A stretch of 64,000 bases of DNA from Zootoca vivipara (GCF_963506605.1 NC_083278.1:89776001-89840000), one strand, 5' to 3'; shown: positions 32,570-63,676, counted from the stretch's first letter. Notes: a model not told the origin generated them from the sequence alone. Translations and numbers: made by a program.

Positions 32570-34645
32570 GGCTTCCGGTTGACCGCGCCATCTTTGCTCA
32601 GACGGGGGTCCGATCAGCGGAGCGGACCTCGGCGCTTCAGAGGTGGAGGGAATTGCTCCAGCGAAGCAAAACCTCCTTAAAAGCCCCAAATCGAGCTTTT
32701 TGGGGACGGATTTTGCCTGGCGGCGCCAAAAGCGGGCTCTCTCCTCCCCGGATCGGCTTTGTTTAAGCCCCCGAGAGCGAGGAGGTGAACCGCGGCGGAC
32801 AGGCTGACACTGCTGCTCTGAGAGCGCGAAGCTGCGAGTCTGGGAAGTGGAGGCGGCCGATTCTTCCAAGAATAATTAGCAAATGAATAGACTGTGAGTA
32901 ATTTGGATTGTTTGGAATTTAAATTAAGGCAATTTGGATTTGGGAGAGAGGGGGAAAAGAGGAAGCCACCCCCCCCACGGTAACATAAGAGACAGTAAAC
33001 AGAAACCCGAAGCCGTAAACAGAAGATCTTAACTTAAAAGGATCCCTCAAAGGCATCAAAGAGAATCTCCCCTAAATGCAGGGTGAAAGGGGAGAGAGAC
33101 TGTGGTTGTGAGTGCCCTGCAGCAAGAGGTAAAGACTAAGAAAAACCTTTCTTTTCCTCGGGAGCCGGCAGCCCAGACAACCCAGTGAGTTGATTAGGAT
33201 TTATAAGTCAATTTTTATTTCACTGTATTTCTGAACTTTGTGGAAATTCTTTTTTGGTTTAAATGTTTGTGAAATGTGAGTTCGAACTTTATTGTCAATA
33301 AGACTTGAAGAATGCAGCCAGCTTGTTAAAATGGAGTCGAGAAAATAAACTGTGATCATATTCCACCCCACGTGACAAGTTTTGACCTTGGCAGGATTGA
33401 ACTATGTCAACAAAAAAGTGTTCCCCTGAGTTCCAGCGGTCTGTTTTGACCTTAATGTGGGAAACAAGAATAGAACTATGTCAAGAGGAGACAAAACGGC
33501 AAGAGTTACAGCAACAATTTCAGATGGTGATGGCAGAATATGATTTTCTAGAAGATGAAGCTTTTGAAACTGAAAAAGATGAATGTGAGAATGATAATGA
33601 TGGTGACTGTGATTTGGAAGAAAAAGATGAAGATGAGGACTGTGACGATTCAACACAAAATGAAGCACACCATGAAAAAAATGATGACTTTACTCTACAA
33701 AAAGTTGGATGGAGTGCCCTGCATTTGAGGGGGGCACGATTGGTATTACTGGAACTCCAGAACACCCACAGGGAAGAAGGAAAAAATATGCAGAGAAGAG
33801 AAGAAATTCAGGGGTCTTGTATGGTGGCCTGGATGGCAAAAGACTGTAAACAGGGGGTGGGGTGAAGGGAAAGTGATGTTGTGATTATAAGGATGGATTA
33901 ACAGGTTTATAACTGGTCTGCTGATTATGGAATTTGCTGGATTGGGGGGGTGGAGCTGGTAATCGGGGATGTAAGGTTAAATTGAGAATAGTTATAGTTT
34001 TAAAAGTGAATGGATTTTGGAAAAATGTGAAAATATGGAGGCTTATAGAGGGAGTAAAAATTAGGCACGGGAAGATAAAATGGGAGTTTGATTTTTCAGT
34101 GATTTGAACATTAGGTGAAAATGATAATAATTGATTTATAAGTTGTATAAGATATAAAGGTGTATTTTTATAAAGTAAGAAACTGTTAAAGATGATAAAA
34201 AAGGGATGAAAACCGGGGAAGGGGGGGGGAGGGGAAGCCCACAAAATATGGTTTTACAATTATGAATGTAAGAAATTTTTTTTCTGTTTTGTACTGTTCT
34301 TTTTCTCTTTTCTTGCTCTTTCTTTTTTCTCTTTTTTCCTATTTCATTTTTTTTCTTTTTTTGGTATGACAATAGATGGTTGGATGGATGTCCTCCTGCG
34401 TACTGCCCTGGTTTGCTGGAGCTCCCTGGTGGCAGGGGGGGGCTTTGGGGTCAGGGGAGGGGGAGGAGGACAGAAATCCAAGCATAAAATGGACCATCTC
34501 TGACTGTTCACCTACATGAGATACTTCTGTGGCAGGGGAGGATCCATGTGGGTGGGTGGGAAGGAGGTGGAAAAGGTGTTTATGTATGTACCGTTTTCTT
34601 TTTTGCAGTTTGTAAAATTAATAAAAAGTATGTTTAAAAAAAAAA
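32570..34645 (+). mobile_element. Poly(A) non-LTR retroelement lacking RT (element A)
   Basis: 17-bp TSD caaatttggacacaacg (32553-32569, 34646-34662); GGCTTCCGG start, CpG-rich 5' end, AATAAA 34620 and A10 tail. Confidence 0.85.
33404..33865 (+). CDS. 153-aa ORF of element A (helical/coiled-coil N-terminus, acidic tract, ends KQGVG*)
   Basis: Uninterrupted ATG-to-TGA ORF centrally placed in the element; function unknown. Confidence 0.5.
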   Translation: MSTKKCSPEFQRSVLTLMWETRIELCQEETKRQELQQQFQMVMAEYDFLEDEAFETEKDECENDNDGDCDLEEKDEDEDCDDSTQNEAHHEKNDDFTLQKVGWSALHLRGARLVLLELQNTHREEGKNMQRREEIQGSCMVAWMAKDCKQGVG

Positions 34646-35683
34646 CAAATTTGGACACAACGTCACATGCGAATATGCGAGGGATCATATACCGTTTGCG
34701 TAGACAGATGTCACACCTAGGGCAGCCAAAACAGGTAAAATCCAGTGTTTCTGAACACAAAAGTCAGACAGCCAGGGGTGCTGGGAGCACAGGAGAGGTT
34801 GCACAACAGCGGCCTCTAGCGACAGCTATGCTGGTACTGCACCTAGAAAACTTTCCCTCTCCACAGCAGCTTGGCTCGCCTTTGCAGACTGGATACGTCA
34901 TGGGTCAGGACAGGGTGGGGCCAATCACAGGGATGAGCCAAGGGTGGAGGGAAGATGAGGCAGGATAGGTCATGGGTCGGGACAGGGTAGGGCCAATAAC
35001 AGGGATGAGCCGGGGTGGGGGGGGGAGGGGCTGGGATGACTAATGGGTCAGGACAGGGTGAGGGCAGGGTGGGTCGGGATGGGGTGGGGAGAGTCACAGG
35101 ATGAACCACAGCAACACGTAAAACATTTCAACAAAATGAAGGGGGACTCTGAAGGTAAGGGGAGTCTGAAGAGGGACTCTGAGGGCCCATTTAACAGACT
35201 AAGCCACAGCAACACGTGGCCAGGCCTGCTAGTAGTTTTATGAACTTACATCATGTCACATCTTACTTGACTTTTCTCTAAGCTAAATACACTGCAATCT
35301 TTTAAAGATGAAACCTCTGCAAGGACATCTCCTTGTGCAATTGAACTTGCCCCCTTCTCCTTCCTTGTGCACCATGTGGAAGGGGGGGGGAGACATTCTG
35401 TTGAGCAGGGAGAAATCCTTGTACTGATGGAGCATTTGCTATAGCACAAATCCTCCCAAAAGATACCAAGTTGTATTCAATGTATCACTAAAGTGAATGA
35501 TCTGTCAACACATAGATTTGTTCTTGTATAATAAAACATTCTCCACCTCTTCTTCCCCCATGGCCAAATCTGTTCTGGGGTGTTTCAGAGGAGATTTGGG
35601 AATAGTGGGTGGGTGGTGGTGGAATAAAATCCCATTGTGCTAGCAAGATTTTAGTTGAATACTTCCCACTTGATTTTACTTAC

Positions 35684-35781
35684 CAAAATAAGTCTTTCAA
35701 ATGCAGAAAGTTTCTCCCAAGGGAAAATGCAAGGTCCACTCTCCTCATCATCACTTTCTCTCAGTACTTCTAATTTTGGGT
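35684..35781 (-). CDS. DNAH14: DNAH14 exon (PKLEVLRE...FPWEKLSAFERLIL)
   Basis: acag|AC, TTG|gtaagt; 98 nt. Confidence 0.9.
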
Positions 35782-36059
35782 CTGTAAGAGATTAAATAGT
35801 AATTTACAACATTACTGAAACTTTGAAACAGTTGAAACCATATAAAAATGTTGCAACTAATTTGTAACTTTTATACAGCCATATAATGGAATAACATAAC
35901 TGCCAGGATAAAAGTGAAGTGTGGTGGTTCTCAAACGTTTCCCTGAGCCACACTTTCAGAATAAAAATTTGCTCACACCACACCAATTTTTAAATTGATA
36001 AGAAATACACTGGAAAACGAAAAGAGACAACTCTTAGCAGTACTTGATTTATAACAGAG

Positions 36060-36136
36060 ACAGGAGTGCCTGGCGTGCTATGGTCCGTGGGGTCACGAAG
36101 AGTCGGACACGACTAAACGACTAAACAACAACAACA
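36060..36136 (+). mobile_element. RTE-BovB 3' end
   Basis: ggggtcacgaagagtcggacacgactaaacgactaaac(aac)n. Confidence 0.85.
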
Positions 36137-36728
36137 AAACAATTACCTTATAATATGACCAGAAAGTATAAAACAATGCAGCTACATAAAAACATGAACC
36201 ATTCTCCAAATATAATTATAAACGAGCCTCTTACATATGTACCTTACTGTAAGTATGTATACAAACTCAGTGAGAGGTGTGAGCTTGCTTTAGCTGGGTA
36301 ATCTCATTTATATTAGGTCTAATTTGAGACAAACAAACTCTCAAATCACCCACACAAATAAGCCTTTCTCTTCTCTACATATATGTGTAACTAAAGACAT
36401 CACAATCTCTGTTGTACCCCTATTCCAAAGGAAACATGAACCCCAGGTAAGCACCAGGAACCCCTGGAATCTCACACCACTCAGAGATTGGGGTGGCATG
36501 CAACATTATAAAAGCTTTTTGTGGACTGGAGTCTCACTACATCAGGTGCATGGATTGTGATTCTAAGTTGTCAGGTGCAAATTTCCAATGCTCTCTCATC
36601 CAAAGGAAACTAAACCCGAGAGCATTGCTACTTCAATTTTTCATGGTTTGGGGACACAGGTAGTGTTTTCAACAATAGGTTAGAAAGGCATGCTGGAAAT
36701 CAACACATAGTTTTACATCAACACTTAC

Positions 36729-36938
36729 CATGCCTTGATGACACTGGTCTATAGCCTGTACTGATCAAATTATATACATCCTGACTATTTAGAAAAGCTC
36801 TCCATTGCTGAGAATTTGTTGAAAGGGAATCACACAAGAGGCTGAATGCTGGCATGCGAGTGCTCATGTACCTGCATTCTTTCCACATCATGTCAGTAAT
36901 CCAATGGAGTGGAGGAGTTTTCTTGAATGCACGTGAAC
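36729..36938 (-). CDS. DNAH14: DNAH14 exon (SRAFKKTPPLHWITD...SSRH)
   Basis: ttag|GT, ATG|gtaagt; 210 nt. Confidence 0.9.
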
Positions 36939-37734
36939 CTAATTGAGGAATAAGAATTATATTATACATTTAATAAGTGTACATATCTACTTTTGAGATT
37001 TTCACCCAGGAAAATAAATACCGGTATGGTCATATTATTTTTAGCTTCATAAGTAACTGACAAGAAGACTTGCAGTGCAGTCCTGGAATGCCTTATATTT
37101 AAGTTCAATGGATTTCAATCAGGCCTGCTCGCAGATAAATGGGTATAGAAGTTGTTTCTACTCAGAAATTGGCCGTACACAATATAGCAGCAGTATTCCA
37201 TTTATATTACTTCCACTTTGTTTGGACTTTTGTCAAAAACTACACCACAATGGGGAAGATTCTAACACTTGTTAAATTCAGAATTGAAGTGGAAGAGTTC
37301 CTTAGTAGTTCACCCCAAATCTTTATAACTATTCTTTAAAAATAATTTAAATCACTATAAATGGAAGTGTCTGTCTACACGTGTCTCCAGACTGTCTGTA
37401 TTTTGAAGGAAGGATTCATACCTGGGAATTTAGGTTTTCACAATTAAAGTGGATTAAATCACTCTGTCAGCCCAGTGCAACAATTTCTTTAAAAAGAAGA
37501 GACTTTATGGTGTTAGGATCAATGAAAGATTAATGGGGTGGGGAAACAGCCACAACACATCAGAATGAATGCTCAATAAATACCAGATATAATCTAATCT
37601 CTATGTGAGATTTGTGCAAGGAATTAACGATAGCTCAATATATTGGAGGAGGCCCACAACTACTTTTTTGGTAGCTTGTCCTATGGTCCTCTAACTGTTG
37701 TTTTTTAGTTCATGGATGGCAGGAGTGCCAAGTA

Positions 37735-37959
37735 CAGTGGTACCTCTGGTAAGAACTTGATTCGTTCTGGAGGTCCGTTCTTAACCTGAAACTGTTCTTA
37801 ACCTGAAGCACCACTTTAGCTAATGGGGCCTCCTGCTGCCGCCGCCGCCGCCGTAGCACAACTTCTGTTCTCATCCTGAAGCAAAGTTCTTAACCTGAGG
37901 TATTATTTCTGGGTTAGCGGAGTTTGTAACCTGAAGCGTTTGTAACCTGAGGTACCACT
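37735..37959. mobile_element. Tc1/mariner-type MITE
   Basis: TA|CAGTGGTACCTC...GAGGTACCACT. Confidence 0.85.
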
Positions 37960-38346
37960 CAAGCATGGGGGCTCAAGCATTCACAAAACGTTTGTTCTGG
38001 GGGCTCAGCACCCACACTGCAGAGCCTCCGACACAACTTCTGGTGCCTCGCGAAGCACCAAAAGTCACGTCTGAGGCATTGCAAAACCTCAGATATAGTA
38101 ATCAGGAACCCACATAGTAATCATTCATCAGAGTCACTCAGTTCAGATCTCTGCTGAGGTATGTTTACCCTTCAAGCAGCCCAGAAAATGGTGAATTCTC
38201 CCACTCTGTCTTTCACCCCTCCTCTTCTCTACATGCCTCGTGAAAGCAGGCTTAAATCTCCCCCCCCCAATCTGAACTGGAACTTAACCCTTGTTGTTCC
38301 TGTGAACTCCCTGGCTCTATATCCCTCCCTGTCTGTTCCTCTAGAC

Positions 38347-38482
38347 CAGGCATAGGCAACTTTGGCTCTCCAGATGTTTTGGAACTACAACTCCCATGAT
38401 CCCTAGCTAACAGGGCCAGTGGTCAGGGATCATGGGAGTTGCAGTTCCAAAACGTCTGGAGAGCCAAGGTTGCCTATGCCTG
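38347..38482. mobile_element. hAT MITE (palindromic, actacaactcccat family)
   Basis: CAGGCATAGGCAAC...GTTGCCTATGCCTG; perfect TSD ctctagac. Confidence 0.9.
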
Positions 38483-38875
38483 CTCTAGACTGACTTCAAC
38501 AGCTCTCTCCACATTATCTCTCTCGGGCACACCTCCTCCTTCCTCCAACCCTAAGTCTCCCCCTCCCTCTGGGGAACTTGAAACCTCTGGCTCATACCTG
38601 ACACCTGGGGCCCAAGTGTTTCTTCCATCCCCACAAGTCCATGATTTCTGCATTGCAGGAGGTTGGACTAGGTGACCCTTTGGGACCTTCCATCTCTACA
38701 GTTCTACCCATTGTAGTGCCTTTACTTGAGTTTAGAAATTAGAAAAGGGCATGCCTAATTAGTACATTTCTGAAAAATGAAAAACAGAGAATTTTTTCTC
38801 TGATTTTTCAGTTTCCATCATTGCCAAATTTCATTCTCGCTTGTAGAGCCAGGAAAAAACCCTGTATTTGTAGTA

Positions 38876-39082
38876 CAGTGGTACCTCGGGTTACAAACGC
38901 TTCAGGTTACAGACTCCGCTCGGGTTAAGAACTTTGCTTCAGGATGAGAACAGAAATCATACTCAGCGGTGCGGTGGCAGCAGGAGGCCCCATTAGCTAA
39001 AGTGGTGCTTCAGGTTAAGAACAGTTTCAGGTTAAGAACGGACCGCCGGAACGAATTAAGTTCTTAACCAGAGGTACCACTG
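38876..39082. mobile_element. Tc1/mariner-type MITE, inverted relative to 37735-37959
   Basis: TA|CAGTGGTACCTCGG...GAGGTACCACTG|TA. Confidence 0.85.
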
Positions 39083-39452
39083 TATAACAGATTATTTAGA
39101 TCTCTAATGTGAGGGAACAATGGAAAGATATTGCACTGGACTCAGGCTACCCATGGGCAGAAGCTGCCTGTGGGACGTTCTATTTGAAGAAGGGGTATAA
39201 GCAGCGATTTGCTGTTCTGTGCCACCTGAAAAGGTACTCTGAAGGATTAGAGGACCCTCCAAACATTATGGGGGTGGTGCTGGGGACTGCAGGGGAAACA
39301 ACATATATCAATTATCTCCTTTTGGGAGCTTCCACTGATATTTGTCTTTTCTGCAAGTAAAAGGAGCTGTTTTAGAAATGGCAAGTCTATTTCTGAGAGG
39401 TGTATGAGAGTACAATTTGACCTATACATTTACTGAATGTGGCCTCCTTTAC

Positions 39453-39648
39453 CAAAAGTCTCAGAGTCCTGTGTGTCCATAATATTTGCCATTATGCTAG
39501 ACTGAAGGAAGAAGTTCCACTGATTCTCTGGTATAAATCCAAGCTTGTTAGTAAGTAGATTTCCATCATATTTATTTTTCATAATTGCTGTACACATCAG
39601 AAAAGCAAAGCATAGCTGATTCTCACTGAACAGAGCTGAAGAAACTCT
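39453..39648 (-). CDS. DNAH14: DNAH14 exon (RVSSALFSENQLCFAFLMC...SETF)
   Basis: acag|AGA, TTG|gtaaag; 196 nt. Confidence 0.9.
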
Positions 39649-39746
39649 CTGTTGAATAAGAAATTTAAGAACAATGAAAATCCATTATATTTTACAGATA
39701 CTAATATTAGCCAAAAGTCATATGTGTAATAAATTCAGGTACACAC

Positions 39747-40198
39747 CTTATAAACGTTTTTTGTTAATTTCTCTATTATAGCATTAATATGTCCTTGGAA
39801 ACTGTCTGCGATACTCTCTGTTTTGTCCTCATCTTCTATGGGGGGAAGCTTGATGGGAAGTCTCTCTGATTGAGTCCTAAAAACTGGCCGAGGCTTAAAA
39901 ATTCTTGTGGAACTCAATGAAACTCCAATTTTTAATTTGAGCATGTACTCTACAGAGTCTTCAAAGATCTTATGAAACCACTCCAGGGGAAACTGATACA
40001 TATAGTTGATATGAGAAAGATCTGATACTACAAAGTAGAGGATGGCACCATGAGTTGCAATAGGAAGATAGCTTTCACGCAGTGCCTCTATTTTAACTTC
40101 TGTTGCTGCAGATGCTTCAACACGCTCAAAAATTTCTGTTGAGGTGATTTTAGATCTTTGCAAATTGTCAATAAGGTCTCCATCATCTAGAATATGTC
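39747..40198 (-). CDS. DNAH14: DNAH14 exon (HILDDGDLIDNLQRSK...INYMYQFPLEWF...NVYK)
   Basis: gtag|GA, AAG|gtgtgt; 452 nt. Confidence 0.93.
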
Positions 40199-40968
40199 CT
40201 ACAATTTAAAGAAAGTTTACTTCATTTGTGGTATAGAAATAAATCAAATAATGCATTATTGATTAAATATCTACTCTTCTGTAAAAAAAAAATTTTTTTT
40301 AAATAAACTGGAGTGTAATTGTGGATAAATCTAGTAAAAGAAGCAAGGAACTTTTATGCTGCTCTTTAGTTACAATATCTCCCAGTATGGCTAAAATAAA
40401 ATCCATAACAGTAATAAGCAGGGTGAACAAGAACATCAATTAAATTAAATTTAGCAAATCAGAACAATACAACTATCAGATTAAACTGAACCCAGATGAC
40501 TAGGCCTGGGCAAGTACAAAAGGTCCAAATTTGGTGTTAGATACTACTGCCCTAATATCAAAAGGCAGGAGGGATTGGAAGAGGGTCTCTGGGCTGATTG
40601 CAGTATTTGGGCAGGTTTGTGTGGGAGGTGGTCCTTTAATTACAATTAGAACGGTTTACAATTTAATTTGCACAACACTTTATACAATTAACTCATACTC
40701 TTCCTTTAAGGAGTTCAGAGCACTGTTTTAGACCCACGAGGTAGATTAGGTTGAGGGCTTCATAGCTGAGTGGGAATCTGAACCTGAACATCCAAACTAA
40801 CATTCTAGCCTCTGCATGACACACGGAAATCATTGCAGATGACCGTATCCATGTCATTTCCTATAAAGAACAATTCATTTAATTTGTAACTTATTTAGTT
40901 ACAGGTGCCTATAATTTGTTCAAAACATATGGATGACATTTCGAGGATTTCTGTACATTTTTCATTAC

Positions 40969-41213
40969 CATCTGTTTTTTGGAGAAGCCTAAGTGACTTT
41001 TGTTCCAGTTCACGAAGTGTTATTAGGTCAGCAGCTATGCTTTCTAGCAACCCACAACGCCGGTGTTCAACCTCTGGTTTCTCCTTAATTAGAACAGTAG
41101 ATAAAAGCTGATCTTGCAAACCTTCAAATGTTACAGTGAAATTTATCATTGTCACAATACTGCATATTGCTGGCAGAAAATGAGGGTTGGGTTTTTGTGT
41201 TGTCAAGTATAAT
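40969..41213 (-). CDS. DNAH14: DNAH14 exon, AAA5 (LYLTTQKPNPHFLP...INFTVTFEGLQDQLL)
   Basis: tcag|A, ATG|gtaatg; 245 nt. Confidence 0.94.
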
Positions 41214-41331
41214 CTGAAACAACAATTAACAATAACATCAGGTGTGAGGAAAGTTAAAGCCATAGCTGAGTCAAACAAATATAGCTAATTTAAATATAGT
41301 TAGTTTCAAATTACATAAGTAAAAAATTATA

Positions 41332-41561
41332 TAGTGGTACCTCGGTTTAAGAACAGTCCTGTTTATGAACGTTTTAGTTTACAAATTCCGCAAAACCAGA
41401 AGCAGTGTCCCAGTTTGAGAACTTTACCTCGTCTAAGAACAGAATCCGAACAGTGGAAAGGCAGGAGGCCTCATTAGGGATAGTGTGCCTAAGTTTAAGA
41501 ACGGTTTTGGTTTAAGACGGACTTCTGGAACGCATTAAGTTCTTAAACTGAGGTAACACTG
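41332..41561. mobile_element. Tc1/mariner-type MITE
   Basis: AGTGGTACCTCGGTTTAAGAAC...GTTCTTAAACTGAGGTAACACTG|TA. Confidence 0.8.
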
Positions 41562-41583
41562 TATCACTGAAAAGAACAGTTAC

Positions 41584-41705
41584 CTGAAGTTTTGGTTGCA
41601 CTCAATTTCAGAATCTCCTATTCTAATGAAGTCTTGCCCTGATTTGTTGTAGATTTCCTTTTTTAAGATTGGCTTCATATTTGAATCCAGTGTTTCACTG
41701 AAATC
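41584..41705 (-). CDS. DNAH14: DNAH14 exon (DFSETLDSNMKPILKKE...IRIGDSEIECNQNF)
   Basis: gtag|GAT, CAG|gtaact; 122 nt. Confidence 0.92.
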
Positions 41706-41956
41706 CTACAAAGCACAAAACCAGTCTTAAGGTGCTTAAACCTGAAGCAGTGTGTGAAGGTGTTGACATCATAACTTCATTTATCCCCTCAATCAGAATA
41801 CCCTTGCCCACCCATCTTTTTCACCTTCTTAGGATGAGAGGACAGGGTAGGCTACTTTTACTCCACAGCAGGCAAGAGGGGAGTGAGGATGAGAGGACAA
41901 GATGAAAGAGGTGAACAGGGAGGTGTAGCAACTTCAGAACAATCTCAGAGGATATA

Positions 41957-46660: not shown

Positions 46661-46857
46661 TAATTGGGTCTATACATTAAGACAGGTTGCGTATCTGTAA
46701 CTGTTGTAACAGACATGTGCAATCATAGTTGTGGGTTCTGTGCAGAGCAATGCTTGGAGCTTTCTAAAGCTACCGGTAGGTGAAATAGTTTGGGCAAGAA
46801 GCCCATTCCCAACCCCCTATAAGCATGAACAAAGGGGCATAGCTCCAGTCTTTCTTA

Positions 46858-47380: not shown

Positions 47381-48319
47381 TTAGTTCCTAACAAATCACT
47401 GCAGCAGCTATAAGGGAAGCACCAGAGTAAGAGCAGGTCAAATGCAACACCTGCAGCAGATAAAGAGAATGGTGTCGTGTTTCCTCACTGCAGTTCCTTC
47501 TCAGAGTCAGTGAAATGCATGGATGGGAAGAGGTAGATGGGTCGAACTAAGCACTGATCATTCAAGGGCACATGATAAAAATTCAAAAAAGCCAAAGCAC
47601 CATAAGATATGCCTGCCTCAAAGGCATTTGAAGAGAGACACCATATATACCGTAAATTATTGGTGATGATTATGATTAGCAGTAGTAGTAAATTTGTAGG
47701 ACTACACAGAGATCACAGAGGAGAAAGAACACAACATTGTCTCCCATTCTACTTATCTGCAATTTTCTCTGCTTGTTATCAAACTGAGCTGATTATTTAT
47801 TATTCCTGGTTTCTACTATTTCACCCCCTGTAATACATATCAATCTTATTTTCTTAAAAGTTTTGGTATCCTTGCTAGGGAAAAACAATTAAATTTTAAA
47901 ATGTATATGTAAAAAGTGAATTATTTATTTAATACCCATATGTGAATATATCATGGGAGGGGGAATGGGTCCTAGGAAAGCTGCTCTCTTCATACAATCA
48001 TTATTCGTACCCACACTCCAGTCCCCAGGTGGCCTTTGTCTTCACTTATTCACACCCTTTAGGGAAGACTGAACCTAGAGCAGAACATTCTAAATCCTCA
48101 TTCCCAGGCTAGATATATCTCTGAGAAAACTCTATCCCTTGTTACCCTCTCACTCTGCTCCAGCTGAATTACTTTTTAACAAATAAGTAGACAGATTTTT
48201 GCCTACATAAGATTTTTTAAAAATAAAACAATATATCCCAAACTGAGACAGACACAAACTTTATGTTATTTAACAAGCAATATAAATTCTATAGTATATA
48301 ACAAGTAGAATTCTTTTAC

Positions 48320-48415
48320 CAGCACTAAACTTCTTTGTTTATCAGTCAATTTTTCATATGCACGTTTTAGTAGCTCCTCTGCTTCAGCTACCTTCAATTG
48401 TTTTGGCTCTACAAA
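48320..48415 (-). CDS. DNAH14: DNAH14 exon, stalk CC2 (FVEPKQLKVAEAE...)
   Basis: atag|TTT, CTG|gtaaaa; 96 nt. Confidence 0.9.
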
Positions 48416-48832
48416 CTATATAAGAAGATATATTTATAATTCAGCTTGAATGAAGGAATATGGCTATATGGAACTCAATGGACAAACAGAAAAATATATA
48501 GGTACAATACAGATATGCAAATTACACATTTCACTTCATATGGAGATTTCATTGAAAGCAGCATCTCTGTGTCAAGTTCTTTCTCCACTTTCTTATGTTT
48601 TGGCACACTTACTGATAATGTGCCATCATTACATTTCATGCTCATCTGTTCCCACCAGCCCATGATACATTGCAGAACTGACAAAATGCATAACACAATG
48701 ACTTCCTAACTTGGGGAAATTTACCTAATAGTTGCAGTGAAGACTTGTGGATGTGGGCTAGGGGATGGAGGCTCAACATAAGGATGTTATTTCTCTGTGG
48801 CCATCCCATGTTCAGCATAAACTGTGTTATTA

Positions 48833-49241
48833 CTGTGTTTCTCCAAAAATAAGACACCGTCTTATATTTATTTTTCCTCAAAAACAAAACAAAACACGGT
48901 GGCTTATTTTCAGGGGATGTCTTTTAAAAATATTTTTATTAAGTATGGTACAGTTTAACCTACAAGAGGTTAAACCATAGCTGTCAACTTTTGGATTTGA
49001 AAATAAGGGATCAGCAGCCTCACCTGTCCTGGGGACAGTCTATGGTATATCTAACAATCCAGGATAGCAGTGGGAAACGGCGCTGGAATAAGGGAATTTC
49101 CAGCAAAAAAAGGAAAAGTTGACAGTGTGGCTTGGAATAAGGGAGTTTCCCACAAAAAAAGGGAGGGTTGGCAGCTATGGGTTAAACTGCCTATCACTAT
49201 GGCTTATTTTCGGGGTATGGCTTATTTTCGGAGAAACACAG
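48833..49241. mobile_element. Tc2-like MITE interrupted by hAT MITE
   Basis: TA|CTGTGTTTCTCC...GGAGAAACACAG; ggcttatttt units. Confidence 0.75.
48976..49179. mobile_element. hAT MITE
   Basis: CATAGCTGTCAAC...GTTGGCAGCTATG; perfect TSD ggttaaac. Confidence 0.85.
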
Positions 49242-49896
49242 CATCTCATATGTGCTTATAAGCGAAGTTGTAATATAATGCACCAACACACACCTCCTTA
49301 CACATAATTAGGTAAGGATCCTACCATAGGTACGATGCTGGAGAGAATGTGACTTTTGGTGTACTTATGAGAATGGCTGTGGAGGACATAAAATTATCTA
49401 TCCCCAGAGCTCAGAACTTGGTGGCTGTTTCTTATCACATGGTGAGGAGCTATAGCAATGTTCCCAGGTTTTTTTAAAAAAGAAGACAGAATGTCCCTAT
49501 TTTCATCAGAGAAATGTTGGAGGGTATGTGCATGCATGCAAAGTACAGGAGAGGAGAATATAGTAAACTTTATTCTCCTCTCCTGTACTAACAGTCTCAT
49601 TTCCCCTCTTTTGTATGCACTGATTTGTATACATTGTAGATGCATATTTATACACGCAGGAGAGAAGGCAGATTGTGGCCCGTATAATTAGGTTAACGTT
49701 CAAAAGGATACAGTGGTTTTGTTTTTTAATTCCTCAAATAATTTTGGCTGAAATACATTTGCAAAACTGAGCACAAATTCCTGTTTATTTCTATTTAGAA
49801 TATCTCCCAATATAAAAAAAATTAAAAGTTTTTCTTATGAGGACATTATTTTAACAACTTTTTATGATGATTCAGAAACAGTAGCTGTAAAGATAC

Positions 49897-50028
49897 CTTT
49901 TTTACAACGTGATAGTTATCTAAAGCTAAAACCCATTGACACATGGAGCAGCAGGCAACAGACACAAGTCCTACTTTTAAAGGGTTGAAATCAGGCAGCC
50001 TTACATATTTTTTCAACTGCAGAAGCAC
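49897..50028 (-). CDS. DNAH14: DNAH14 exon, MTBD ([16 protein letters not shown]...CSMCQWV...)
   Basis: ttag|GTG, AAG|gtatct; 132 nt. Confidence 0.93.
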
Positions 50029-50588
50029 CTAAAATGAACACAGATCAGTTGTTAAAACAAATGACTTAAAACAATAATAGAGACTCAGCTATACAGCTGC
50101 AAATAAAACGTTTTAAGTGTGTTTTAAGTGCAACATACAATGTGACACTAGGTGGCGATGCTGAGCCTTATGGAAAATTTCATGTTGTATTACAAATGGT
50201 TTTTAAAAAGCAGTGCATAGTGAATAGGGGCAGGGATTTCATCAAATATTGCTGGATGGAGGTAAAATTGTCTAACAGTTCTGGAGGAGCTTTAAAAAGA
50301 AACAATTTCAAAAAAAGGCCAGGAAATTATTTGTTGACCAGTTTTGGGTCAGTCCTGCTTTCATATTTTACCCGACTGAGTGACTACAACATTGGTAATT
50401 ATTTAATGTATTTCTACCATGCCTTCCAGGCCAAGCCCCTACAAGGCAGCATACAATAAAATGTTAAAACCTAAACAATGGACAAATCATGTAATGAACA
50501 CAGTATCAGATAAAACTCATATATGGGGAGTGAGGGGGCAATCATTACATCCAGATAACTTAATGATTTTGATAGCTGATATGTCAAC

Positions 50589-50739
50589 AGAGGACGAGAT
50601 GGTTGGACAGTGTTCTCGAAGCTACGAACATGAGTTTGACCAAACTGCGGGAGGCAGTGGAAGACAGGAGTGCCTGGCGTGCTATGGTCCCTGGGGTCAC
50701 GAAGAGTCGGACACGACTAAACGACTAAACAACAACAAC
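50589..50739 (+). mobile_element. RTE-BovB 3' fragment
   Basis: cagaggacgagatggttggacag...gagtcggacacgactaaac(aac)n. Confidence 0.88.
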
Positions 50740-51298
50740 ATCCAACTGAATAACCATGGGAGATGATTTCTCATTCTTTTGGAAGTTAAAGACTTTAACT
50801 TGATTCCTTTCATGCTTTTTTGCCACCATTATCCCTAATCTTTGCCTCTGAACCATGCTTGTTATTTTCCTCAGGATTAACAAAGAACTCTCTACTGAGA
50901 GGCCATTGTCTTTCTAAAAGGGGACGGTTTTTCTATTCTTAAACCAGCCTAAGTGGGTTCAATGGAACCCAAATTAAAAGAGAAAAGAGAAAAACTTAAA
51001 GAAGGGAGAAGAAGCAAAACCAAGACAGCCAGTACTTTGCAACAGAACTTCCTGATCATTTCTCTTTCTTTGTAGCTTAAGATGCATTTGCAGAATGTGA
51101 CCCTCTACTTTTAGCCTTCTCATTTCCTATTTCTAAAATGGTAATTAAGTAAACTGACCAGGAGAATAAGAGAATTGCAGTATTAGTTTGAAATGTGCAT
51201 TAAAATGATGTTGCTTATTGTTTAAGGTAATCTATCTGAAAATTCTTAGGTATACAATAGAAGAAACAAAAACAATATACACTGCATCCTTCCTTTAC

Positions 51299-51458
51299 CT
51301 TTTCTGGTAGATTATCTTTGTCTAGATTAACCAACCTCTTTAGGAACCCAGGATCTGAAAGCAGTAATTTTGCTGTTGCCCAGTTAGGTTTCTTTTGAAG
51401 AAGGACACAAACTGCATTCATAACAGTAAGTACAAGTGGAGGAGGGCGAGCATACACT
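51299..51458 (-). CDS. DNAH14: DNAH14 exon, MTBD ([20 protein letters not shown]...LPEK)
   Basis: acag|A, AAG|gtaaag; 160 nt. Confidence 0.93.
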
Positions 51459-52032
51459 CTGTGTGATACAGAAGAAAAGTGAATTGAACAAAATGTGCTA
51501 AAATTCAAAACCTTTTTTTGTGTGTCAAAGAAGTCCCTAACAACTTTAGTTAGAGCCACTACTGGACAGTGGCTTATCCTGCCTCATTAATATAGTGCGA
51601 TTAACATACAGCAGCATTTCAAATGAAAAATCTTAACACTGGAAAATACTTTGGATAGTGCTCAAAATATTTAGAATTTCATGTCAGACAGGGAACTATC
51701 ATGACTATTGTGATGTAGTAACAAAAATGAAGAAACTAGAGTTAATTTGCACATTTATTTACAGAAGTACGGTAAAACATTTTAAAGTTTGTTGACAGCA
51801 TTCTTCACTTCTTTTCCCTTAAAAGATATTTAAATCATACCTACTTTAAATTACCACAATAGTAGCAATGCTTACCTAAACCATAATGAAGGAAGATGAA
51901 CAGGAAAATGCTTTGAAATGCAGCAAATATGGGGCCACTAGATTTGTTGCTATTTATCCAGCATGATCTGAAAACTGTACTGATTTTTAACCAAAATCAT
52001 AATCAAACTACAAACATGAGCAACACACTTAC

Positions 52033-52127
52033 CTAACTTCTGCAATGTGGTTTTTGTCAAGTGCATCAAGAGCAGCGACAGCTTTTTCCAAAGTTGGCAT
52101 TACAGCACTGAGCTCTTCTGTTGCTTG
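52033..52127 (-). CDS. DNAH14: DNAH14 exon (QATEELSAVMPTLEKAVAALDAL...)
   Basis: atag|CAA, TAG|gtaagt; 95 nt. Confidence 0.91.
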
Positions 52128-53291
52128 CTATATATATATGTATAAAGAAAAGTTAGACTTTGATGTTTTCATTGACAGTGTATAGTTGTACAAATGCTGT
52201 TTTGTTTTCTATTCTCTGGGTATGTGCTCATATTTATAATATTTGTTTCAAGCCATCTACAGCTGAAGATGGGATCTACACATCCTAGAACCTGCAAAAT
52301 TTGGGATGGAATCAGAAATTGCACTGGCTCCCATAGTCAACATCAACCATGTTATATAACCAATTTTTGTTCCTCCCCCAGGAGCATTGCCATTTTATTG
52401 GAGATCTCAGTGTGTCTGTCATTTTGTCAAGAAGCCCATTCCTCTGCCTGTTCTGCTCATTACGGATAGTGGGGCATATTTGCAGCTTGCAGGCTGAAAG
52501 AGGTTCAGGAACTATGTCATACCCTATGTTATCACACACATTTCGTACCTGGTGTAGGCAGATGTCAGTGCCCTACTTAAGAGCCATACACCTGCTCCCC
52601 TGCCCTCTTCTCTCCATGGTAGCATCTGCCCTCTTCGGTCTCTCAGTGTGATTTATTTGGTTGCTTCAGGACCAGCTAGAAACTTTTGGGCCTATCTAAT
52701 CTTCAGTTCGTAGGTCAGGCCTTTTTGCCTACTCTACACTGAATAGCTGGTTGGGGACACTTGATAGCCTGCCGTGTTGTTTCATAGGTTGATCTGGGTT
52801 TCAGGTGAGTCACATTTGGTGGGTGGTTAGGTATGGGCAGAGGACGGTTATGTTTCAGCCTGGTGATGCTTTTTAGGAACCTTTCACGGGGTTGGGGTGG
52901 TCCTGATGCTTATTCTCTGGGCATTGGGGAAAGATAGGGGCCACCCCTGAGGCCAACCTGCCTCATCTACCTGGAGCTATCAGGCTGCAGGGTGATGGTG
53001 ATGCAGTAAGGATTCCCTGCTCTCTAAGACTTATGGTATGATCTGGGAAAGGTGGTAGGCGGAACAGCCATTTCCCCCTTTCTGCAGGCAGGGGTTGGAT
53101 TGCCTAGTGGCTGCAGTCTGTTAGTTTGAAGTCTGCAGGAGTTTTTCTTATGTTTAACCTTAAAATACCATAAAGTGGCCTTAGTTCAACTCCAGCCTGT
53201 GAGTCTGTCTCTTTATTCCGCCATCTGATCGCAAGCTGCAAATTCCCAGCATGGCACAATAGAAATGAAAAACAATGGTAATAGGATATAC

Positions 53292-53417
53292 CTGTGCATA
53301 TTCTTCCACAGTGCGTGTTTCTGCAGCCATAATTTCTTCATCCTGTTGAACAATAGCTCGAACTTGCTCCACAACTAATGCATCTTTGTGAAGCTTTTCC
53401 ACAAGTTCCTCTATTTC
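53292..53417 (-). CDS. DNAH14: DNAH14 exon, stalk CC1 (EIEELVEKL...EEYAQ)
   Basis: ccag|GAA, CAG|gtatat; 126 nt. Confidence 0.92.
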
Positions 53418-54329
53418 CTGGTAGGAGAGATCCATTTCTCAGTCAATTACATTTATTGCAGAATATCTGAATCAATAATTAATCTACTATTTTGGCTGTT
53501 TTATGAACTACTCAGCAAGTCCTTAATGTGATGGCAAAGATGACATGGACAGTAAGTACATAAGGACTGTGCTGCTCAGAGCAAAACACTCTTCTGTTCC
53601 AGCAGTGGTGTCAAGTCACACGCCCCTGAAAGACTTGTAGGCATGGTGTGATATTGATAGCTATCTCTCCTGTTGCTTGTGCTACCACCTGGTAATCAAA
53701 GGAACACCACCTTTCAGCAGGACCACATTCAGAGATGCAGGTGAAAGCTGAAGGCACAGCATGCAAAGCTGTGCTATGTGGGAAGCTGCAGTCAATCCTA
53801 ACTATACATGAATCCTAGTTACGTGTATGAAGGGATTAAGACAACAGAGCTGTGTTCCTAGACTCAGTTAGGTCACACACCCTTTCTCTGATGAGAGAGG
53901 AAGCGGAACCTCTTCCTGTCCTCTTCATATGCGCAAAGAACATTGGGACATAGTTTCCAAAATGAGCATCTAAGACATGGTAGTCCATGAGGTGCTGTCC
54001 AAATGTTGTTGAACTACAACACCCATCATCCCCAACTATTGACCATGCTGACTGGGGTTGATGGGAGGTGGAGTCCAACAAAACTAACTAACCTTAATCT
54101 AATGTCTATCTATGACAGAGTAACCACTGTCAAAAGCTCTGCCTCTTTATCTATTTTTAATTATTGTTTTCAGATGACCATTTGCTATTAATATTGTACT
54201 GTTTAACCAACCAGGTACCATATAAATCTACATAAAATATAGCTTATATGCTTTAAATTTTGACATGAATCCGGATAAATCTCTAAATGTTTTGAAAGAA
54301 CAAAGAAGCAGATTTGAATGAAATTTTAC

Positions 54330-54438
54330 CTTTGATTTTTTCTCTATTTGAGGACCAAGGACAAGTAACTCATTTTGCATAACTATAATCTGTGAGGTTG
54401 CTTCTAGTATTTTGGTGAGACCAGTATGATAGCAAGTT
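54330..54438 (-). CDS. DNAH14: DNAH14 exon, stalk CC1 (TCYHTGLTKILEA...KKSK)
   Basis: ttag|A, AAG|gtaaaa; 109 nt. Confidence 0.91.
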
Positions 54439-55094
54439 CTAAAATTAAAAATAGTTAAAATCCAATCATAGTCTGGCCTTTTCTGTTACATATATTGAAA
54501 TAGTCATATATTAAGTTGGCTTGCATGACACTAGCATTTTGCAAGACTCTGTAAATCTGTGGGCTCCCAGAGAGACTGTTGTAGCTGCTTTGCTCCTCCT
54601 CTGTTCATTTTGGTGCTGCACTGAAATAGGAACAAGGTTTGTTCACAGTTAAAGGTCATGGTAGTGAGAAGAGGGCTCAACCACAAGTCCCAGTTAGGAT
54701 GACATGGTAAGCACAGAATTTGCAGTAAAAAAGGATCATGGAGGAACAAAGAGGCTATGAGCTCCTCTCTGGGAGCCACATTTGGTCTTACTGTGTTGTG
54801 CAAACCAGATAATTGTAAATTAATCTGGGTCTCCTGAGCTAACTGACAGTTACAGGTATAAGCCTCTGAGCTATTGGAGCAGTTATGTATGCATAGGGTT
54901 ATGCCAAATCTGTCAATTTCTGTTTCTTTCTGTTTCTTATTTTTCCAGTCTTCAGTTATCCACATTTCTACATAGAATCATAGAGTTGGAAGAGACCACA
55001 AGGGCCATCCAGTCCAACCCCCTGCCAAGCAGGAAACACCATCAAAGCATTCTTGACATATGGCTGTCAAGCCTCTGCTTAAAGACCTCCAAAG

Positions 55095-56973
55095 GGACTT
55101 CCTGTCTATCGCCAGCTCCGATCGGCAAAGACTTGCCTCAGCTCTGAGGCAGCCCAGCTCCGTGAGGGGGGGGGAGAGCTGCGAGGGCGATGCAGCCCCC
55201 GAAAAAGAGCCCCAGATTGTGCTTTCTGGGGACGAAGGGCTCAGTGGCTGCTCTATTTGCGCCCCCTTTACCTCCCGGTAAGCTTGAGAAGAGCCCTGGT
55301 GAGAGTGGAGGTGAGAGACGCAGGGGCCATTTTGAGCGTCATTTTACCCTCACTGGGTGAAGCCCTGCAGCCGGCGGAGGAGAGTGATGGATTCTTCCTT
55401 CAAAGTAAGAATTTGATTTGTGGGATAAGCCCAAGGAGAAAACTTTAATTTGATAAGAAGATTCGGAAATAGGGGGCTATTTTAAAAAAGGAAGTCGGTT
55501 GCTACCCTCTGAGAGACAATAAAGCAGGCAATTAACTCTTAGCTGTCAAAAGGAATGGAAACATTCAATTTACCAGGAAGAGGACTTAAAAGCTCCTCTG
55601 TAGCAGGCACAGGGGAGAGGGTTAAAGTAAAATTGCCTGCGAGATACTGACATTTGATAAAAGAAAGTTCCTCTGAAAGCTGGGCCCGAGTCCCTGGATG
55701 GTTTGATGAAAGGACTTGGAGTTAATTGAAGTATTGGATCATTATATTTAATTGGAAATTATTATTCTGGATTTGATGATTTTATGGACTATGTATAGAA
55801 AATGGAGGAAGAGTGCATTCAGTTCAGCCTAAAAAATGGCGAATTTCGTGTTTGAATCTGATCCCTGCCATTTCCGGTTCTCTAACTTGTTGGATGTGTA
55901 TGAAATTTGAGATGCAGAAGGAGGAAGCCATAACAAAAGCACAAGACTGTGTTTTGCAAAAAAAATTCTCACTGCTCACAGACATTAAACAGGAACTAAA
56001 GGAAAATAATGAACAGCTGCAAGAGATCAACTGTTTATGGAGAGACAGATCCACTCCAGAAAAGAGAAAGGACTGAATTTGGAAAACCAGAAAAAAACGC
56101 AAGACGAAGAAGAGGAGGATGAAGAGCATAATGCCCCACAAGTGGCAGATGTGGGGCAAGACATAGCCATATTCCTAGGAGCTCTCAAAAAAGAAACAGT
56201 GGTTTCTGCTGAACTTCCAGTGAGAGGGGGGGTCCAGGGGGAACACTGGGAAATGGAAAAAGAGAATGCTTGTTTGATGTAATACAAAAAGAGATGGCAA
56301 AGGAAGAGGAGAGGGATGGGGTAACAGGTGCAGTGAGAAAGGGTGGGCAGATCTTGTGGAAGGAAGGCTGGAGGTGGATATGGGAAAAGGTGGGAGTGGG
56401 ATGATTATGTAAAGATTAATTTTAATGGTTGGATATGTATGGTTTGAACTGGGTACGATAAAGGGAATTCATTAAACTGTCCTGAGGATTCGGCTTCAGA
56501 AGTAGGGGGGATGATTTTAAATTTAAAAGGAAAAAAATAAAAATTAGATAGATTATTTATGAGTTAAAATATATTGCATTCCTGATAAAAAATAATAAGT
56601 TAAGAGAAGAAGTATGATATATAATTATGATGAATTAGAATTGAATTAAGGTGAGGATTTGGAATGAATAGAAATTGAATAAATAAATATATAATCATAT
56701 GTATAAGGTCGTAAAATTGGGAATATGTAAATGGATATATGATGTATGAAAATAATTGTGAAAACTGCTGTAAGGATAATTAATGGGGAACCCAGAGGGG
56801 GAGGGAACGGGGGAAGTTTAAAAATTTATGGTAATTATTAGAATTAAGAGATTTTTCTCTTTTGTGTGTATTTTTCTTTTTTCTTTTTCTTTTTAATTTT
56901 TTCTTTTTTTATGCTATTTCTTTTTTCTTGTTATTAATGGAAAATGAATAAAAATTACTTTTTTTTACAAAAA
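55095..56973 (+). mobile_element. Poly(A) non-LTR retroelement lacking RT (element B)
   Basis: 15-bp TSD taaagacctccaaag (55080-55094, 56974-56988); GGACTTCC start; AATAAA 56947; TT|AAAG target. Confidence 0.85.
55813..56404 (+). pseudogene. Frameshifted ORF of element B (coiled coil, DEEEEDEE, ends WRWIWEKVGVG*)
   Basis: Three consecutive frames (55813-56076, 56037-56282, about 56280-56404) give the same layout as the element A ORF. Confidence 0.45.
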
Positions 56974-63670: not shown

Positions 63671-63676
63671 ATTTTC

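What the first reader, a model, noticed from the sequence alone, without database searches (positions are those of the whole stretch)
32570..56973. Candidate undescribed family: ~2-kb L1-mobilised retroelements encoding a small acidic protein that ends in GVG-stop
Seen: two independent insertions (A 32570-34645, B 55095-56973) with little nucleotide identity by eye share one architecture. Each has a GG(A)CTTCC first motif, a CpG-rich 5' region, about 700-830 nt of leader, and one central short ORF (helical/coiled-coil N-terminus, acidic D/E tract, hydrophobic patch, Trp-containing C-terminus ending KQGVG* in A and KVGVG* in B). Each ends with an AT-rich 3' region, G-run, T-run, AATAAA, A-tail and a 15-17 bp TSD. 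Established: such TSDs, A-tails and a TT|AAAG target are hallmarks of L1-type target-primed reverse transcription, and HAL1 elements are L1-dependent but encode ORF1p. Inference: no RT, endonuclease, or ORF1p RRM/CTD is visible, so these look like L1 parasites carrying their own small protein. A terminal GVG kept across divergent copies would imply selection on the protein (e.g. a C-terminal degron, processing or binding motif).
Basis: partly seen in the sequence, partly recalled or inferred. Interest (0 to 1): 0.85.

Follow-up and report, generated by a model that had tools for sequence, protein, structure and literature searches.

The report
ORF2-less L1-derived lizard retroposons
Two about 2-kb insertions are full-length copies of a retroposon family that has the head and tail of a lizard L1 element but no reverse transcriptase, and carries only a short acidic reading frame whose function is unproven; this is a moderately interesting variant of a known kind of genomic parasite.

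Summary
Both insertions are real. A (32570-34645) has a perfect 17-bp target-site duplication, B (55095-56973) a perfect 15-bp one. Each has AATAAA and an A-tail.

They are homologous but very diverged. DNA aligns only in a 150-nt block of the 5' region and in a 3' G-box plus pyrimidine tract. GC profiles run parallel along the whole length.

Both start, at the first base after the duplication, with the motif published as the conserved 5' end of anole clade-1 L1 5'UTRs (GACTTCCGGTG, two mismatches each). The long CpG-rich leader and pyrimidine-rich 3'UTR are also L1-like. I read them as ORF2-less L1 derivatives mobilised in trans.

They resemble HAL1 but fail its defining test, because no ORF1p RRM/CTD, RT or endonuclease is detectable.

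A's 153-codon ORF is intact and longer than chance (p about 0.002). B's is not one ORF but a relic split by two frameshifts (p 0.01 or less).

The two proteins are not significantly similar overall. A stop-anchored comparison of the last 45 residues gives 9 identities (p about 0.004), including K-x-GVG.

Selection on the protein is therefore suggested, not shown. No other copies could be fetched, although the scan's first readers noted at least 13 similar elements elsewhere in this genome.

The parts
32553..32569 (.). Left target-site duplication of A (17 bp)
   Evidence: Identical to 34646-34662.
32570..34645 (+). Element A, a full-length 2076-nt copy (A-type subfamily)
   Evidence: Bounded by the TSD and ends in AATAAA plus an A-tail. 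No other copy in the window.
32570..32580 (+). L1-type 5' terminus GGCTTCCGGTT
   Evidence: Two mismatches to the anole clade-1 L1 5' consensus GACTTCCGGTG, exactly at the first base after the TSD (PMC5381506).
32586..32594 (-). Exact AAGATGGCG (YY1-type core) at element positions +17 to +25, on the opposite strand
   Evidence: One search finds 3 exact matches in the whole window on both strands. The anole consensus has ATGGCG at the same distance but on the sense strand.
32570..32900 (+). CpG-rich head, the presumed internal promoter
   Evidence: GC 0.60 and CpG observed/expected 0.91-0.94, against 0.29 for the window.
32639..32788 (+). 5' block homologous to B 55165-55314
   Evidence: Collinear local alignment with z 8.6-13 against dinucleotide shuffles.
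32684..32705 (+). Conserved hairpin or palindrome CCCCAAA-N8-TTTGGGG
   Evidence: 7-bp stem, -10.8 kcal/mol. B keeps it through a two-sided change.
32894..33281 (+). Four exact GTGAGT (5' splice-site consensus) in the leader, at 32894, 33108, 33185 and 33276
   Evidence: the whole + strand has only 14, so about 0.09 are expected in 400 nt. Absent from B. Unexplained.
33404..33865 (+). ORF A: 153 aa, pI 4.4, helix / acidic linker / basic helix, ending KQGVG*
   Evidence: No family or homologue found.
34151..34367 (+). 3' block homologous to B 56734-56935 (G-box 34213-34240, pyrimidine tract 34287-34362)
   Evidence: z 5.8-7.7; coordinates.
34374..34619 (+). GC-rich 3' extension found only in A
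   Evidence: No counterpart in B.
34620..34645 (+). AATAAA (34620-34625) and 10-A tail (34636-34645)
34646..34662 (.). Right target-site duplication of A
55080..55094 (.). Left target-site duplication of B (15 bp), target TT|AAAG
   Evidence: Identical to 56974-56988.
55095..56973 (+). Element B, a full-length 1879-nt copy (B-type subfamily), older than A
   Evidence: TSD, AATAAA and A-tail. CpG observed/expected about 0.5 in the head.
55095..55106 (+). L1-type 5' terminus GGACTTCCTGTC
   Evidence: GACTTCCTGTC at 55096-55106 has two mismatches to GACTTCCGGTG, one of them CG to TG.
55210..55231 (+). Hairpin CCCCAGA-N8-TCTGGGG
   Evidence: -13.5 kcal/mol. It carries the compensatory A-U to G-C change relative to A.
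55894..56404 (+). Relic of the B-type ORF in three frames (two frameshifts); the last frame ends KVGVG*
   Evidence: The last 45 residues align with ORF A when anchored at the stop codon.
56734..56935 (+). 3' block homologous to A (G-box 56785-56816, pyrimidine tract 56869-56910)
56947..56973 (+). AATAAA (56947-56952) and short A-tail (56969-56973)
56974..56988 (.). Right target-site duplication of B

Best explanation
A and B are full-length copies of two deeply diverged subfamilies of one non-autonomous retroposon lineage. The lineage derives from lizard L1: an L1-type 5'UTR, a short ORF where ORF1 would begin, an L1-type 3'UTR, and no ORF2.

Proposed working:
1. RNA polymerase II starts at the first G of the element, directed by the internal CpG-rich head. 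That head has an ETS-like CTTCC core at +3 to +8, a YY1-type core at +17 to +25 in A, and a conserved hairpin/palindrome at +115 to +136.
2. The RNA is cleaved at its own AATAAA and polyadenylated.
3. ORF2p, and probably ORF1p, of autonomous L1s in the same genome act on it in trans. They nick TT|AAAG-like targets and prime on the A-tail, which gives the 15-17-bp duplications.

Shown: the insertion hallmarks, the homology of the ends, the lack of enzymes, and ORFs longer than chance in both subfamilies.

Inferred:
- L1 ancestry, about 0.75. It rests on an 11-nt published terminus plus overall architecture.
- Trans-mobilisation by L1, about 0.9.
- That master copies must keep the ORF open, about 0.5-0.6. 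Translation or the nascent protein might help the RNA reach the L1 machinery, or the ORF may be the remnant of the N-terminal/coiled-coil part of ORF1.
For: - Perfect TSDs, AATAAA, A-tails and L1-like target sites.
- Both elements begin at the first base with a two-mismatch match to GACTTCCGGTG. The pattern has only 14 matches on both strands of the 64-kb window; the three others that I read (10697, 14983, 46481) lie in unrelated sequence. PMC5381506 gives this as the conserved 5' extremity of anole clade-1 L1.
- That paper also reports long 5'UTRs (792-1465 nt) rich in CpG, A-rich ORFs, and T- or pyrimidine-rich 3'UTRs ending in AATAAA plus poly-A. Here the leaders are 834 and 799 nt, the head's CpG observed/expected is 0.93, and the ORF zone is 34-44% A.
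- A and B share collinear homology at both ends and parallel GC profiles.
- No RT, EN or ORF1p domain is detected.
- ORF A is longer than chance (p about 0.002). The B relic stays open for 210 codons across two frameshifts (p 0.01 or less).
- The C-terminal 45 residues align when anchored at the stop (p about 0.004). DNA identity over the last 30 codons is 0.60/0.37/0.33 at codon positions 1/2/3.
- 20 public runs hold 31-mers of A, mostly from one organism, with smaller shares in three other organism labels.
- As leads only: the scan's first readers noted at least 13 similar 1.8-2.3-kb RT-less elements elsewhere in this genome.
Against: - No L1 of this genome was available, so L1 ancestry rests on an 11-nt motif and on architecture. 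An ETS/YY1-type start could be convergent.
- The YY1-type core in A lies on the opposite strand to the published ATGGCG, and it is degenerate in B.
- ORF A has no detectable similarity to ORF1p or to anything else.
- The two proteins are not significantly similar over their full length.
- The ORF zone is the least conserved part of the element at the DNA level. That is not the usual signature of a protein under strong purifying selection.
- Six upstream ATGs precede ORF A.
Confidence: 0.6

Rival explanations
1. The L1-derived non-autonomous family is the same, but the ORF is a passenger. It would be a truncated or frame-shifted leftover of ORF1, or a fortuitous frame in purine-rich sequence. 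It looks intact in A only because A is very young, and the shared GVG* is a coincidence or a DNA-level G-rich motif.
For: - A is very young: perfect TSD, pure A-tail and undecayed CpGs.
- The ORF zone is not alignable between A and B at the DNA level, and the full-length proteins are not similar.
- No homologue exists anywhere.
- Six upstream ATGs precede the ORF.
- The structure prediction has low confidence.
Against: - Two subfamilies have diverged to saturation, yet both still show an ORF or ORF relic far longer than chance, at the same position (element nt 835-1296 against 800-1310).
- The stop-anchored C-terminal alignment is better than chance, and codon position 3 is the least conserved.
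Confidence: 0.3
2. A-type and B-type arose independently from two different L1 families, by similar internal deletions or by splicing of L1 mRNA (as with human SpIREs). Their common architecture would then reflect the parent L1s, not a common non-autonomous ancestor.
For: - HAL1s arose several times independently (PMC5753468).
- Spliced L1 mRNAs are retrotransposed in humans (PMC5860796).
- Lizard L1 families keep alignable 5'UTRs while their ORFs diverge strongly (PMC5381506). That would give exactly the conserved-ends, diverged-middle pattern seen here.
- A carries four consensus splice donors, and 3' splice-site-like tracts.
Against: - ORF start, ORF end and total length nearly coincide in A and B.
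- The tails align from the stop codon.
- The 5' block aligns at almost the same element coordinates in both (A 70-219, B 71-220) with a single one-base gap.
- According to PMC5860796, SpIREs are evolutionary dead ends, whereas this family appears to be multi-copy.
Confidence: 0.1
3. They are processed retrocopies of a lineage-specific, fast-evolving host gene family that encodes a small acidic protein. On this reading they are not a transposon family.
For: mRNA-like layout with a CpG-rich 5' end, one ORF, a long 3'UTR and a poly-A signal.
Against: - The UTR ends are conserved while the coding part is not.
- The L1-type first bases occur in both elements.
- No homologous protein is found in 1.84 billion representatives.
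- Many near full-length copies of constant length were noted across the genome, though these are unchecked notes.
Confidence: 0.04

Closest known systems
HAL1 (half-L1) elements of mammals
   Same: Both are non-autonomous derivatives of L1 that have lost ORF2 and keep a 5' ORF. Both have L1-type ends and depend on L1 in trans. HAL1 arose repeatedly (PMC5753468).
   Different: HAL1 encodes ORF1p. Here the ORF has 153-170 codons instead of about 350, is acidic (pI 4.4), and has no detectable RRM/CTD. The host is a squamate, not a mammal.
Lizard (anole) clade-1 L1 elements
   Same: They share the 5' terminus GACTTCCGGTG, a long CpG-rich 5'UTR whose first part is the most conserved, A-rich coding sequence, and a T- or pyrimidine-rich 3'UTR with AATAAA and poly-A (PMC5381506).
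   Different: These elements are about 2 kb, not about 6.4 kb, with no ORF2 and no recognisable ORF1p. The YY1-type core is inverted in A. Direct sequence homology to an L1 of this genome was not tested.
Human SpIREs (spliced integrated retrotransposed L1s)
   Same: Both are shortened L1 copies made from altered L1 RNA, and both need L1 proteins in trans (PMC5860796).
   Different: SpIREs lose parts of the 5'UTR or ORF1, keep ORF2, and are dead ends. These elements keep the whole head, lack ORF2, and seem to have diversified into subfamilies.
SVA / processed pseudogenes (Pol II transcripts mobilised by L1)
   Same: Both are mRNA-like RNAs copied in trans by L1. Pol II-made substrates need ORF1p as well as ORF2p (PMC2666806; PMC3287187).
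   Different: There is no VNTR or Alu/SINE-R composite structure and no parent gene. The element carries its own L1-like promoter and an ORF.

Membership tests
L1-mobilised (target-primed) retroposed insertion | Target-site duplication of about 7-20 bp flanking the insert | tested here: met
   17/17 bp for A and 15/15 bp for B.
L1-mobilised (target-primed) retroposed insertion | 3' poly-A tail preceded by a polyadenylation signal | tested here: met
   AATAAA at 34620 and 56947; A-tails of 10 and 5 nt.
L1-mobilised (target-primed) retroposed insertion | Target resembling TT|AAAA | tested here: met
   B reads TT|AAAG. A reads TC|AAAT, a looser match.
Non-autonomous element | No reverse transcriptase or endonuclease encoded | tested here: met
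   No Pfam family for any open segment of 28 or more codons that was tested. The longest ORF is 153 aa. Segments overlapping 34333-34373 were not searched.
Lizard clade-1 L1 (5'UTR-derived head) | 5' extremity GACTTCCGGTG | tested here: met
   Two mismatches in each element, at the first base after the TSD. The consensus is from PMC5381506.
Lizard clade-1 L1 (5'UTR-derived head) | N8-ATGGCG (YY1-type site) after the terminus | tested here: inconclusive
   A has an exact AAGATGGCG at +17 to +25, but on the opposite strand. B has CGCCAG at the matching place.
Lizard clade-1 L1 (5'UTR-derived head) | Long (about 0.8-1.5 kb) CpG-rich 5'UTR | tested here: met
   Leaders of 834 and 799 nt; CpG observed/expected 0.93 in the first 300 nt of A.
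Lizard clade-1 L1 (5'UTR-derived head) | Alignable sequence homology to the UTRs of an L1 of the same genome | not testable with these tools
HAL1 | Encodes ORF1p (coiled coil + RRM + CTD) as its only protein | tested here: not met
   No Transposase_22/ORF1 family at E up to 10, no PDB relative, and no ORF1p among the phmmer hits. The model is all-helical plus disorder with no beta strands, at low confidence.
HAL1 | Derived from L1 by loss of ORF2, keeping L1 ends | tested here: inconclusive
   The ends and architecture are L1-like. Descent was not shown by alignment to an L1.
SINE | Pol III head derived from tRNA, 7SL or 5S RNA; length under about 600 nt | tested here: not met
   No Rfam family inside A or B, and the elements are about 2 kb long.
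Processed pseudogene of a host gene | Protein homologous to a host gene product | tested here: not met
   No homologue in the 5.8-billion or 1.84-billion protein libraries. The only hit is a chance match to a plakin-repeat protein.

The most novel reading that the evidence does not exclude
The short acidic protein is a real product encoded by the parasite and kept by selection. It is unrelated to ORF1p, has a helix / acidic linker / basic helix layout, and carries a conserved C-terminal tail (W-x5-K-x-GVG-stop). Two subfamilies would have preserved it through divergence to DNA saturation because it is needed in cis to capture, or to antagonise, the L1 machinery. That would make this the first L1-dependent retroposon lineage known to carry its own non-ORF1 protein.
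Probability: 0.25. Interest if true: 0.7.

Novelty: new variant of a known kind. Interest (0 to 1): 0.45.

Why it matters
Non-autonomous partners of L1 are known as RNA-only parasites (SINEs, SVA, retrocopies) or as ORF1p-only HAL1s in mammals. A squamate lineage that keeps the L1 promoter and tail, has dropped both canonical L1 proteins, and still holds a short unrelated-looking ORF open in two ancient subfamilies raises a direct question: is translation of a parasite RNA, or a minimal helical protein, enough to gain access to L1 ORF2p?

That question bears on cis-preference, a long-standing problem in L1 biology, and a marked-element assay could test it. If the ORF turns out to be a passenger, the family is still useful. 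It would be a young, apparently abundant L1-dependent marker for lizard genome annotation and population studies, and a natural reporter of lizard L1 promoter evolution.

Tried and rejected
There is therefore no read-level evidence on expression, ends or copy variation.
The Rfam scan was split around them, and Pfam pieces that overlap them were left out.
- Local scripts, which compare only within the window, still used the whole of A.

**Blank searches for ORF A**
- Pfam.
- The word-indexed 5.8-billion library, which is limited to proteins of 84-268 aa.
- The ESM Atlas.
- PDB sequences.
- An exact 24-mer in the metagenome collection, and back-translated patterns of the ORF there.
- phmmer against 1.84 billion proteins gave one hit, P0001, a plakin-repeat protein. 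The match is 29.6 bits per repeat and is inflated by seven repeats. I rejected it as chance.

**A against B**
- tblastn and global or local BLOSUM alignments of the full-length proteins were not significant.
- The N-terminal comparison gave p about 0.06.
- The heptad test for a coiled coil gave p about 0.09.

**Other checks**
- Complex prediction on a homotrimer of residues 1-65 returned no verdict. It is not evidence either way.
- No fold search was run, because the model's confidence is too low.
- Three of the other GACTTCCGGTG-like sites in the window were read (10697, 14983, 46481) and lie in unrelated sequence.
- No uninterrupted copy of B's flanking repeat spans the insertion point within the window.
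- Rfam found no family in A or B.
- The sequence supplement of PMC5381506 is not held, and Bao & Jurka 2010 is not held.
- Dfam and Repbase cannot be searched here.

Full report
**Observation**

Reading the two stretches confirms both insertions.
- A runs from 32570 to 34645. It lies between two perfect copies of a 17-bp sequence (32553-32569 and 34646-34662). It ends with AATAAA (34620) and ten A's.
- B runs from 55095 to 56973. It lies between two perfect copies of a 15-bp sequence (55080-55094 and 56974-56988). It ends with AATAAA (56947) and five A's.
- The pre-insertion targets read TC|AAAT for A and TT|AAAG for B.
- These are the hallmarks of target-primed reverse transcription by an L1-type endonuclease and reverse transcriptase.
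- Neither element has another copy in the window.

**Anatomy**

A has an 834-nt leader.
- Its first 300 nt are 60% GC with CpG observed/expected 0.93, against 0.29 for the window.
- Then comes an intact 153-codon ORF (33404-33865).
- The 780-nt 3' region holds a G-box (34213-34240), a long pyrimidine tract (34287-34362) and a GC-rich stretch that B lacks.

B has the same order of parts, but its CpGs are half decayed and its coding zone is broken. Three overlapping open segments in three frames cover 55894-56404, and only the last ends in KVGVG-stop.

Both ORFs exceed chance.
- ORF A is longer than the longest sense ATG ORF in 99.8% of dinucleotide shuffles of the element, and in 99.98% of shuffles of the central 700 nt.
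- In B, allowing two frame changes leaves 210 codons open. That is reached by 1% of shuffles of the element and by none of 1000 shuffles of its central part.
- So B descends from a master with an open frame of about 170 codons and has taken two frameshifts. That fits neutral decay of an older copy.

**Are A and B related?**

Yes, but distantly.
- Sliding local alignments against shuffles give significant, collinear matches only at two places: A 32639-32788 with B 55165-55314 (z 8.6-13), and A 34151-34367 with B 56734-56935 (z 5.8-7.7).
- The rest of the leader and the whole ORF zone are not alignable as DNA.
- Even so, the GC profiles of the two elements run in parallel in 200-nt steps over the whole length, and the ORFs sit at the same element coordinates.
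- Inside the 5' block both have a 7-bp stem with an 8-nt loop: CCCCAAA-N8-TTTGGGG in A and CCCCAGA-N8-TCTGGGG in B. The one difference in the stem is compensated on the other arm.
- With two sequences this is a single covariation, and it could equally be a palindromic protein-binding site in DNA.

**The protein**

ORF A encodes an 18-kDa protein of pI 4.4.
- Its parts are an N-terminal part (1-54), an acidic tract (55-95, 22 D/E) and a basic C-terminal part (96-153, pI 9.3).
- AlphaFold2 without an alignment gives two long helices (8-62 and 98-149) joined by a disordered linker, at mean pLDDT 59.6.
- There are no strands, so nothing resembles the RRM/CTD of ORF1p. At this confidence that is a weak statement.
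- A heptad test gives only p about 0.09.
- No family or relative was found in Pfam, PDB sequences, the ESM Atlas, the word-indexed 5.8-billion library within its length limits, or by phmmer over 1.84 billion representatives.
- The single phmmer hit is a plakin-repeat protein. It matches residues 1-40 at 29.6 bits per repeat, summed over seven repeats. That is expected by chance in a library of this size.

Across their full length the A and B proteins are not significantly similar. The N-termini give p about 0.06.

The tails are different.
- Aligned without gaps from the stop codon, the last 45 residues share 9 identities (score p about 0.004).
- The last 12 share 5, in the pattern W-x5-K-x-G-V-G-stop.
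- Over the last 30 codons, DNA identity is 0.60, 0.37 and 0.33 at codon positions 1, 2 and 3. Position 3 is at the random level.
- The 135 nt after the stop show none (0.28).

This is a small sample, and the landmark was chosen after seeing GVG. Still, it indicates that the two frames are homologous and end at the same stop, and it leans towards constraint on the peptide.

**What the elements derive from**

Boissinot and Sookdeo (PMC5381506) report the following for the L1 families of the anole lizard.
- Clade-1 L1s have long 5'UTRs (792-1465 nt) rich in CpG.
- These 5'UTRs can be aligned across families even though the ORFs are very divergent.
- The first ~120 bp are the most conserved.
- The 5' extremity has the consensus GACTTCCGGTG-N8-ATGGCG.
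- Lizard L1 3'UTRs carry T-rich or pyrimidine tracts and end in AATAAA and poly-A.

A begins GGCTTCCGGTT and B begins GGACTTCCTGTC.
- Each is a two-mismatch match placed exactly at the first base after the duplication. In B one mismatch is CG to TG.
- The pattern has 14 two-mismatch matches on both strands of the window. The three others that I read (10697, 14983, 46481) lie in unrelated sequence, so two hits at the two element starts are not chance.
- A also has an exact AAGATGGCG at +17 to +25, but on the opposite strand to the published ATGGCG.

Several features reproduce the published lizard L1 pattern: the leader length, the CpG head, a second GC rise 400-600 nt in, 34-44% A in the ORF zone, and conserved ends with a diverged middle. 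My reading is that these are ORF2-less derivatives of lizard L1, not foreign parasites. The ORF stands where ORF1 would start and may be what is left of its variable N-terminal/coiled-coil part. That could not be tested, because no L1 of this genome was within reach.

**Mechanism**

The proposed sequence is:
1. Transcription by RNA polymerase II from the internal head.
2. Polyadenylation at the element's own signal.
3. Insertion by L1 proteins supplied in trans.

Pol II-made substrates such as retrocopies need ORF1p as well as ORF2p in cell assays (PMC2666806), so both are probably borrowed. Whether the short ORF must be translated for this is open. I put it at about one half, on the strength of ORF retention in two saturated subfamilies and the tail alignment. 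Against it stand the six upstream ATGs (all followed by frames of 12 codons or fewer), the lack of any homologue, and the fast divergence of the ORF zone.

**Spread**

- 31-mers of A occur in 20 public runs from ten studies. Most are of one organism label (shares up to 0.73), with 0.27, 0.10 and 0.08 in three other labels.
- So close copies exist widely in the source species and, as parts, in relatives. Some holders are guessed to be RNA, but none is on record as RNA.
- The scan's own first-stage notes list at least 13 other 1.8-2.3-kb 'RT-less' elements with an acidic ORF elsewhere in this genome, one quoted as MSTK...GVG*. They also list intact full-length L1s.
- These notes are unchecked and are used only as leads. 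They suggest a family of some hundreds of copies, with potential drivers present.

**Comparison and verdict**

The nearest known kind is HAL1, an ORF2-less L1 derivative (PMC5753468). The defining feature of HAL1, an ORF1p-coding frame, was tested and not met. Human SpIREs are shortened L1s made from spliced RNA, but they keep ORF2 and are dead ends (PMC5860796).

I file this as a new variant of a known kind: a real, young, L1-derived non-autonomous family with an unexplained short ORF.

**Limits**

Those places were kept out of all later searches.

Noticed in passing
window 32894, 33108, 33185, 33276 (+), and 34287-34375, 34585-34604: The leader of A holds four exact GTGAGT (5' splice-site consensus) within 400 nt, where about 0.09 are expected. 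Near its 3' end there are two pyrimidine tracts followed by AG that look like 3' splice sites. B has none of the donors. They could be U1-binding sites that suppress premature polyadenylation, or cryptic splice signals able to trap host transcripts.
   Followed up: partly
window 32684-32705 and 55210-55231 (+): A conserved 7-bp stem with an 8-nt loop sits in the 5' block of both elements. The one two-sided change keeps the pairing. It may be an RNA hairpin or a palindromic DNA site.
   Followed up: partly
window about 8961-9089 (+): An open segment matches the ERG4/ERG24 sterol-reductase family (Pfam PF01222, E 1e-15, profile positions 338-380 of 432). It is probably an exon near the 3' end of a DHCR7/TM7SF2/LBR-like host gene.
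   Followed up: no
window 12957-13015 (+): A tRNA-like match reaches the Rfam gathering score (33.8 bits, model positions 8-63). It is probably the head of a tRNA-derived SINE rather than a tRNA gene.
   Followed up: no
window 54971-55062 and 63676-63767: The repeat into which B inserted has a 98.9% identical partial copy 8.6 kb downstream, so that short interspersed repeat is itself young.
   Followed up: no
window 34374-34619 (+): A carries about 245 nt of GC-rich sequence between the pyrimidine tract and the AATAAA. B has no counterpart, and the origin is unknown.
   Followed up: no
window 33386-33405 and 33466-33485 (+): A short internal duplication, GAACTATGTCAA, occurs once at the ORF start codon and once, out of frame, 74 nt downstream inside the ORF.
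   Followed up: no
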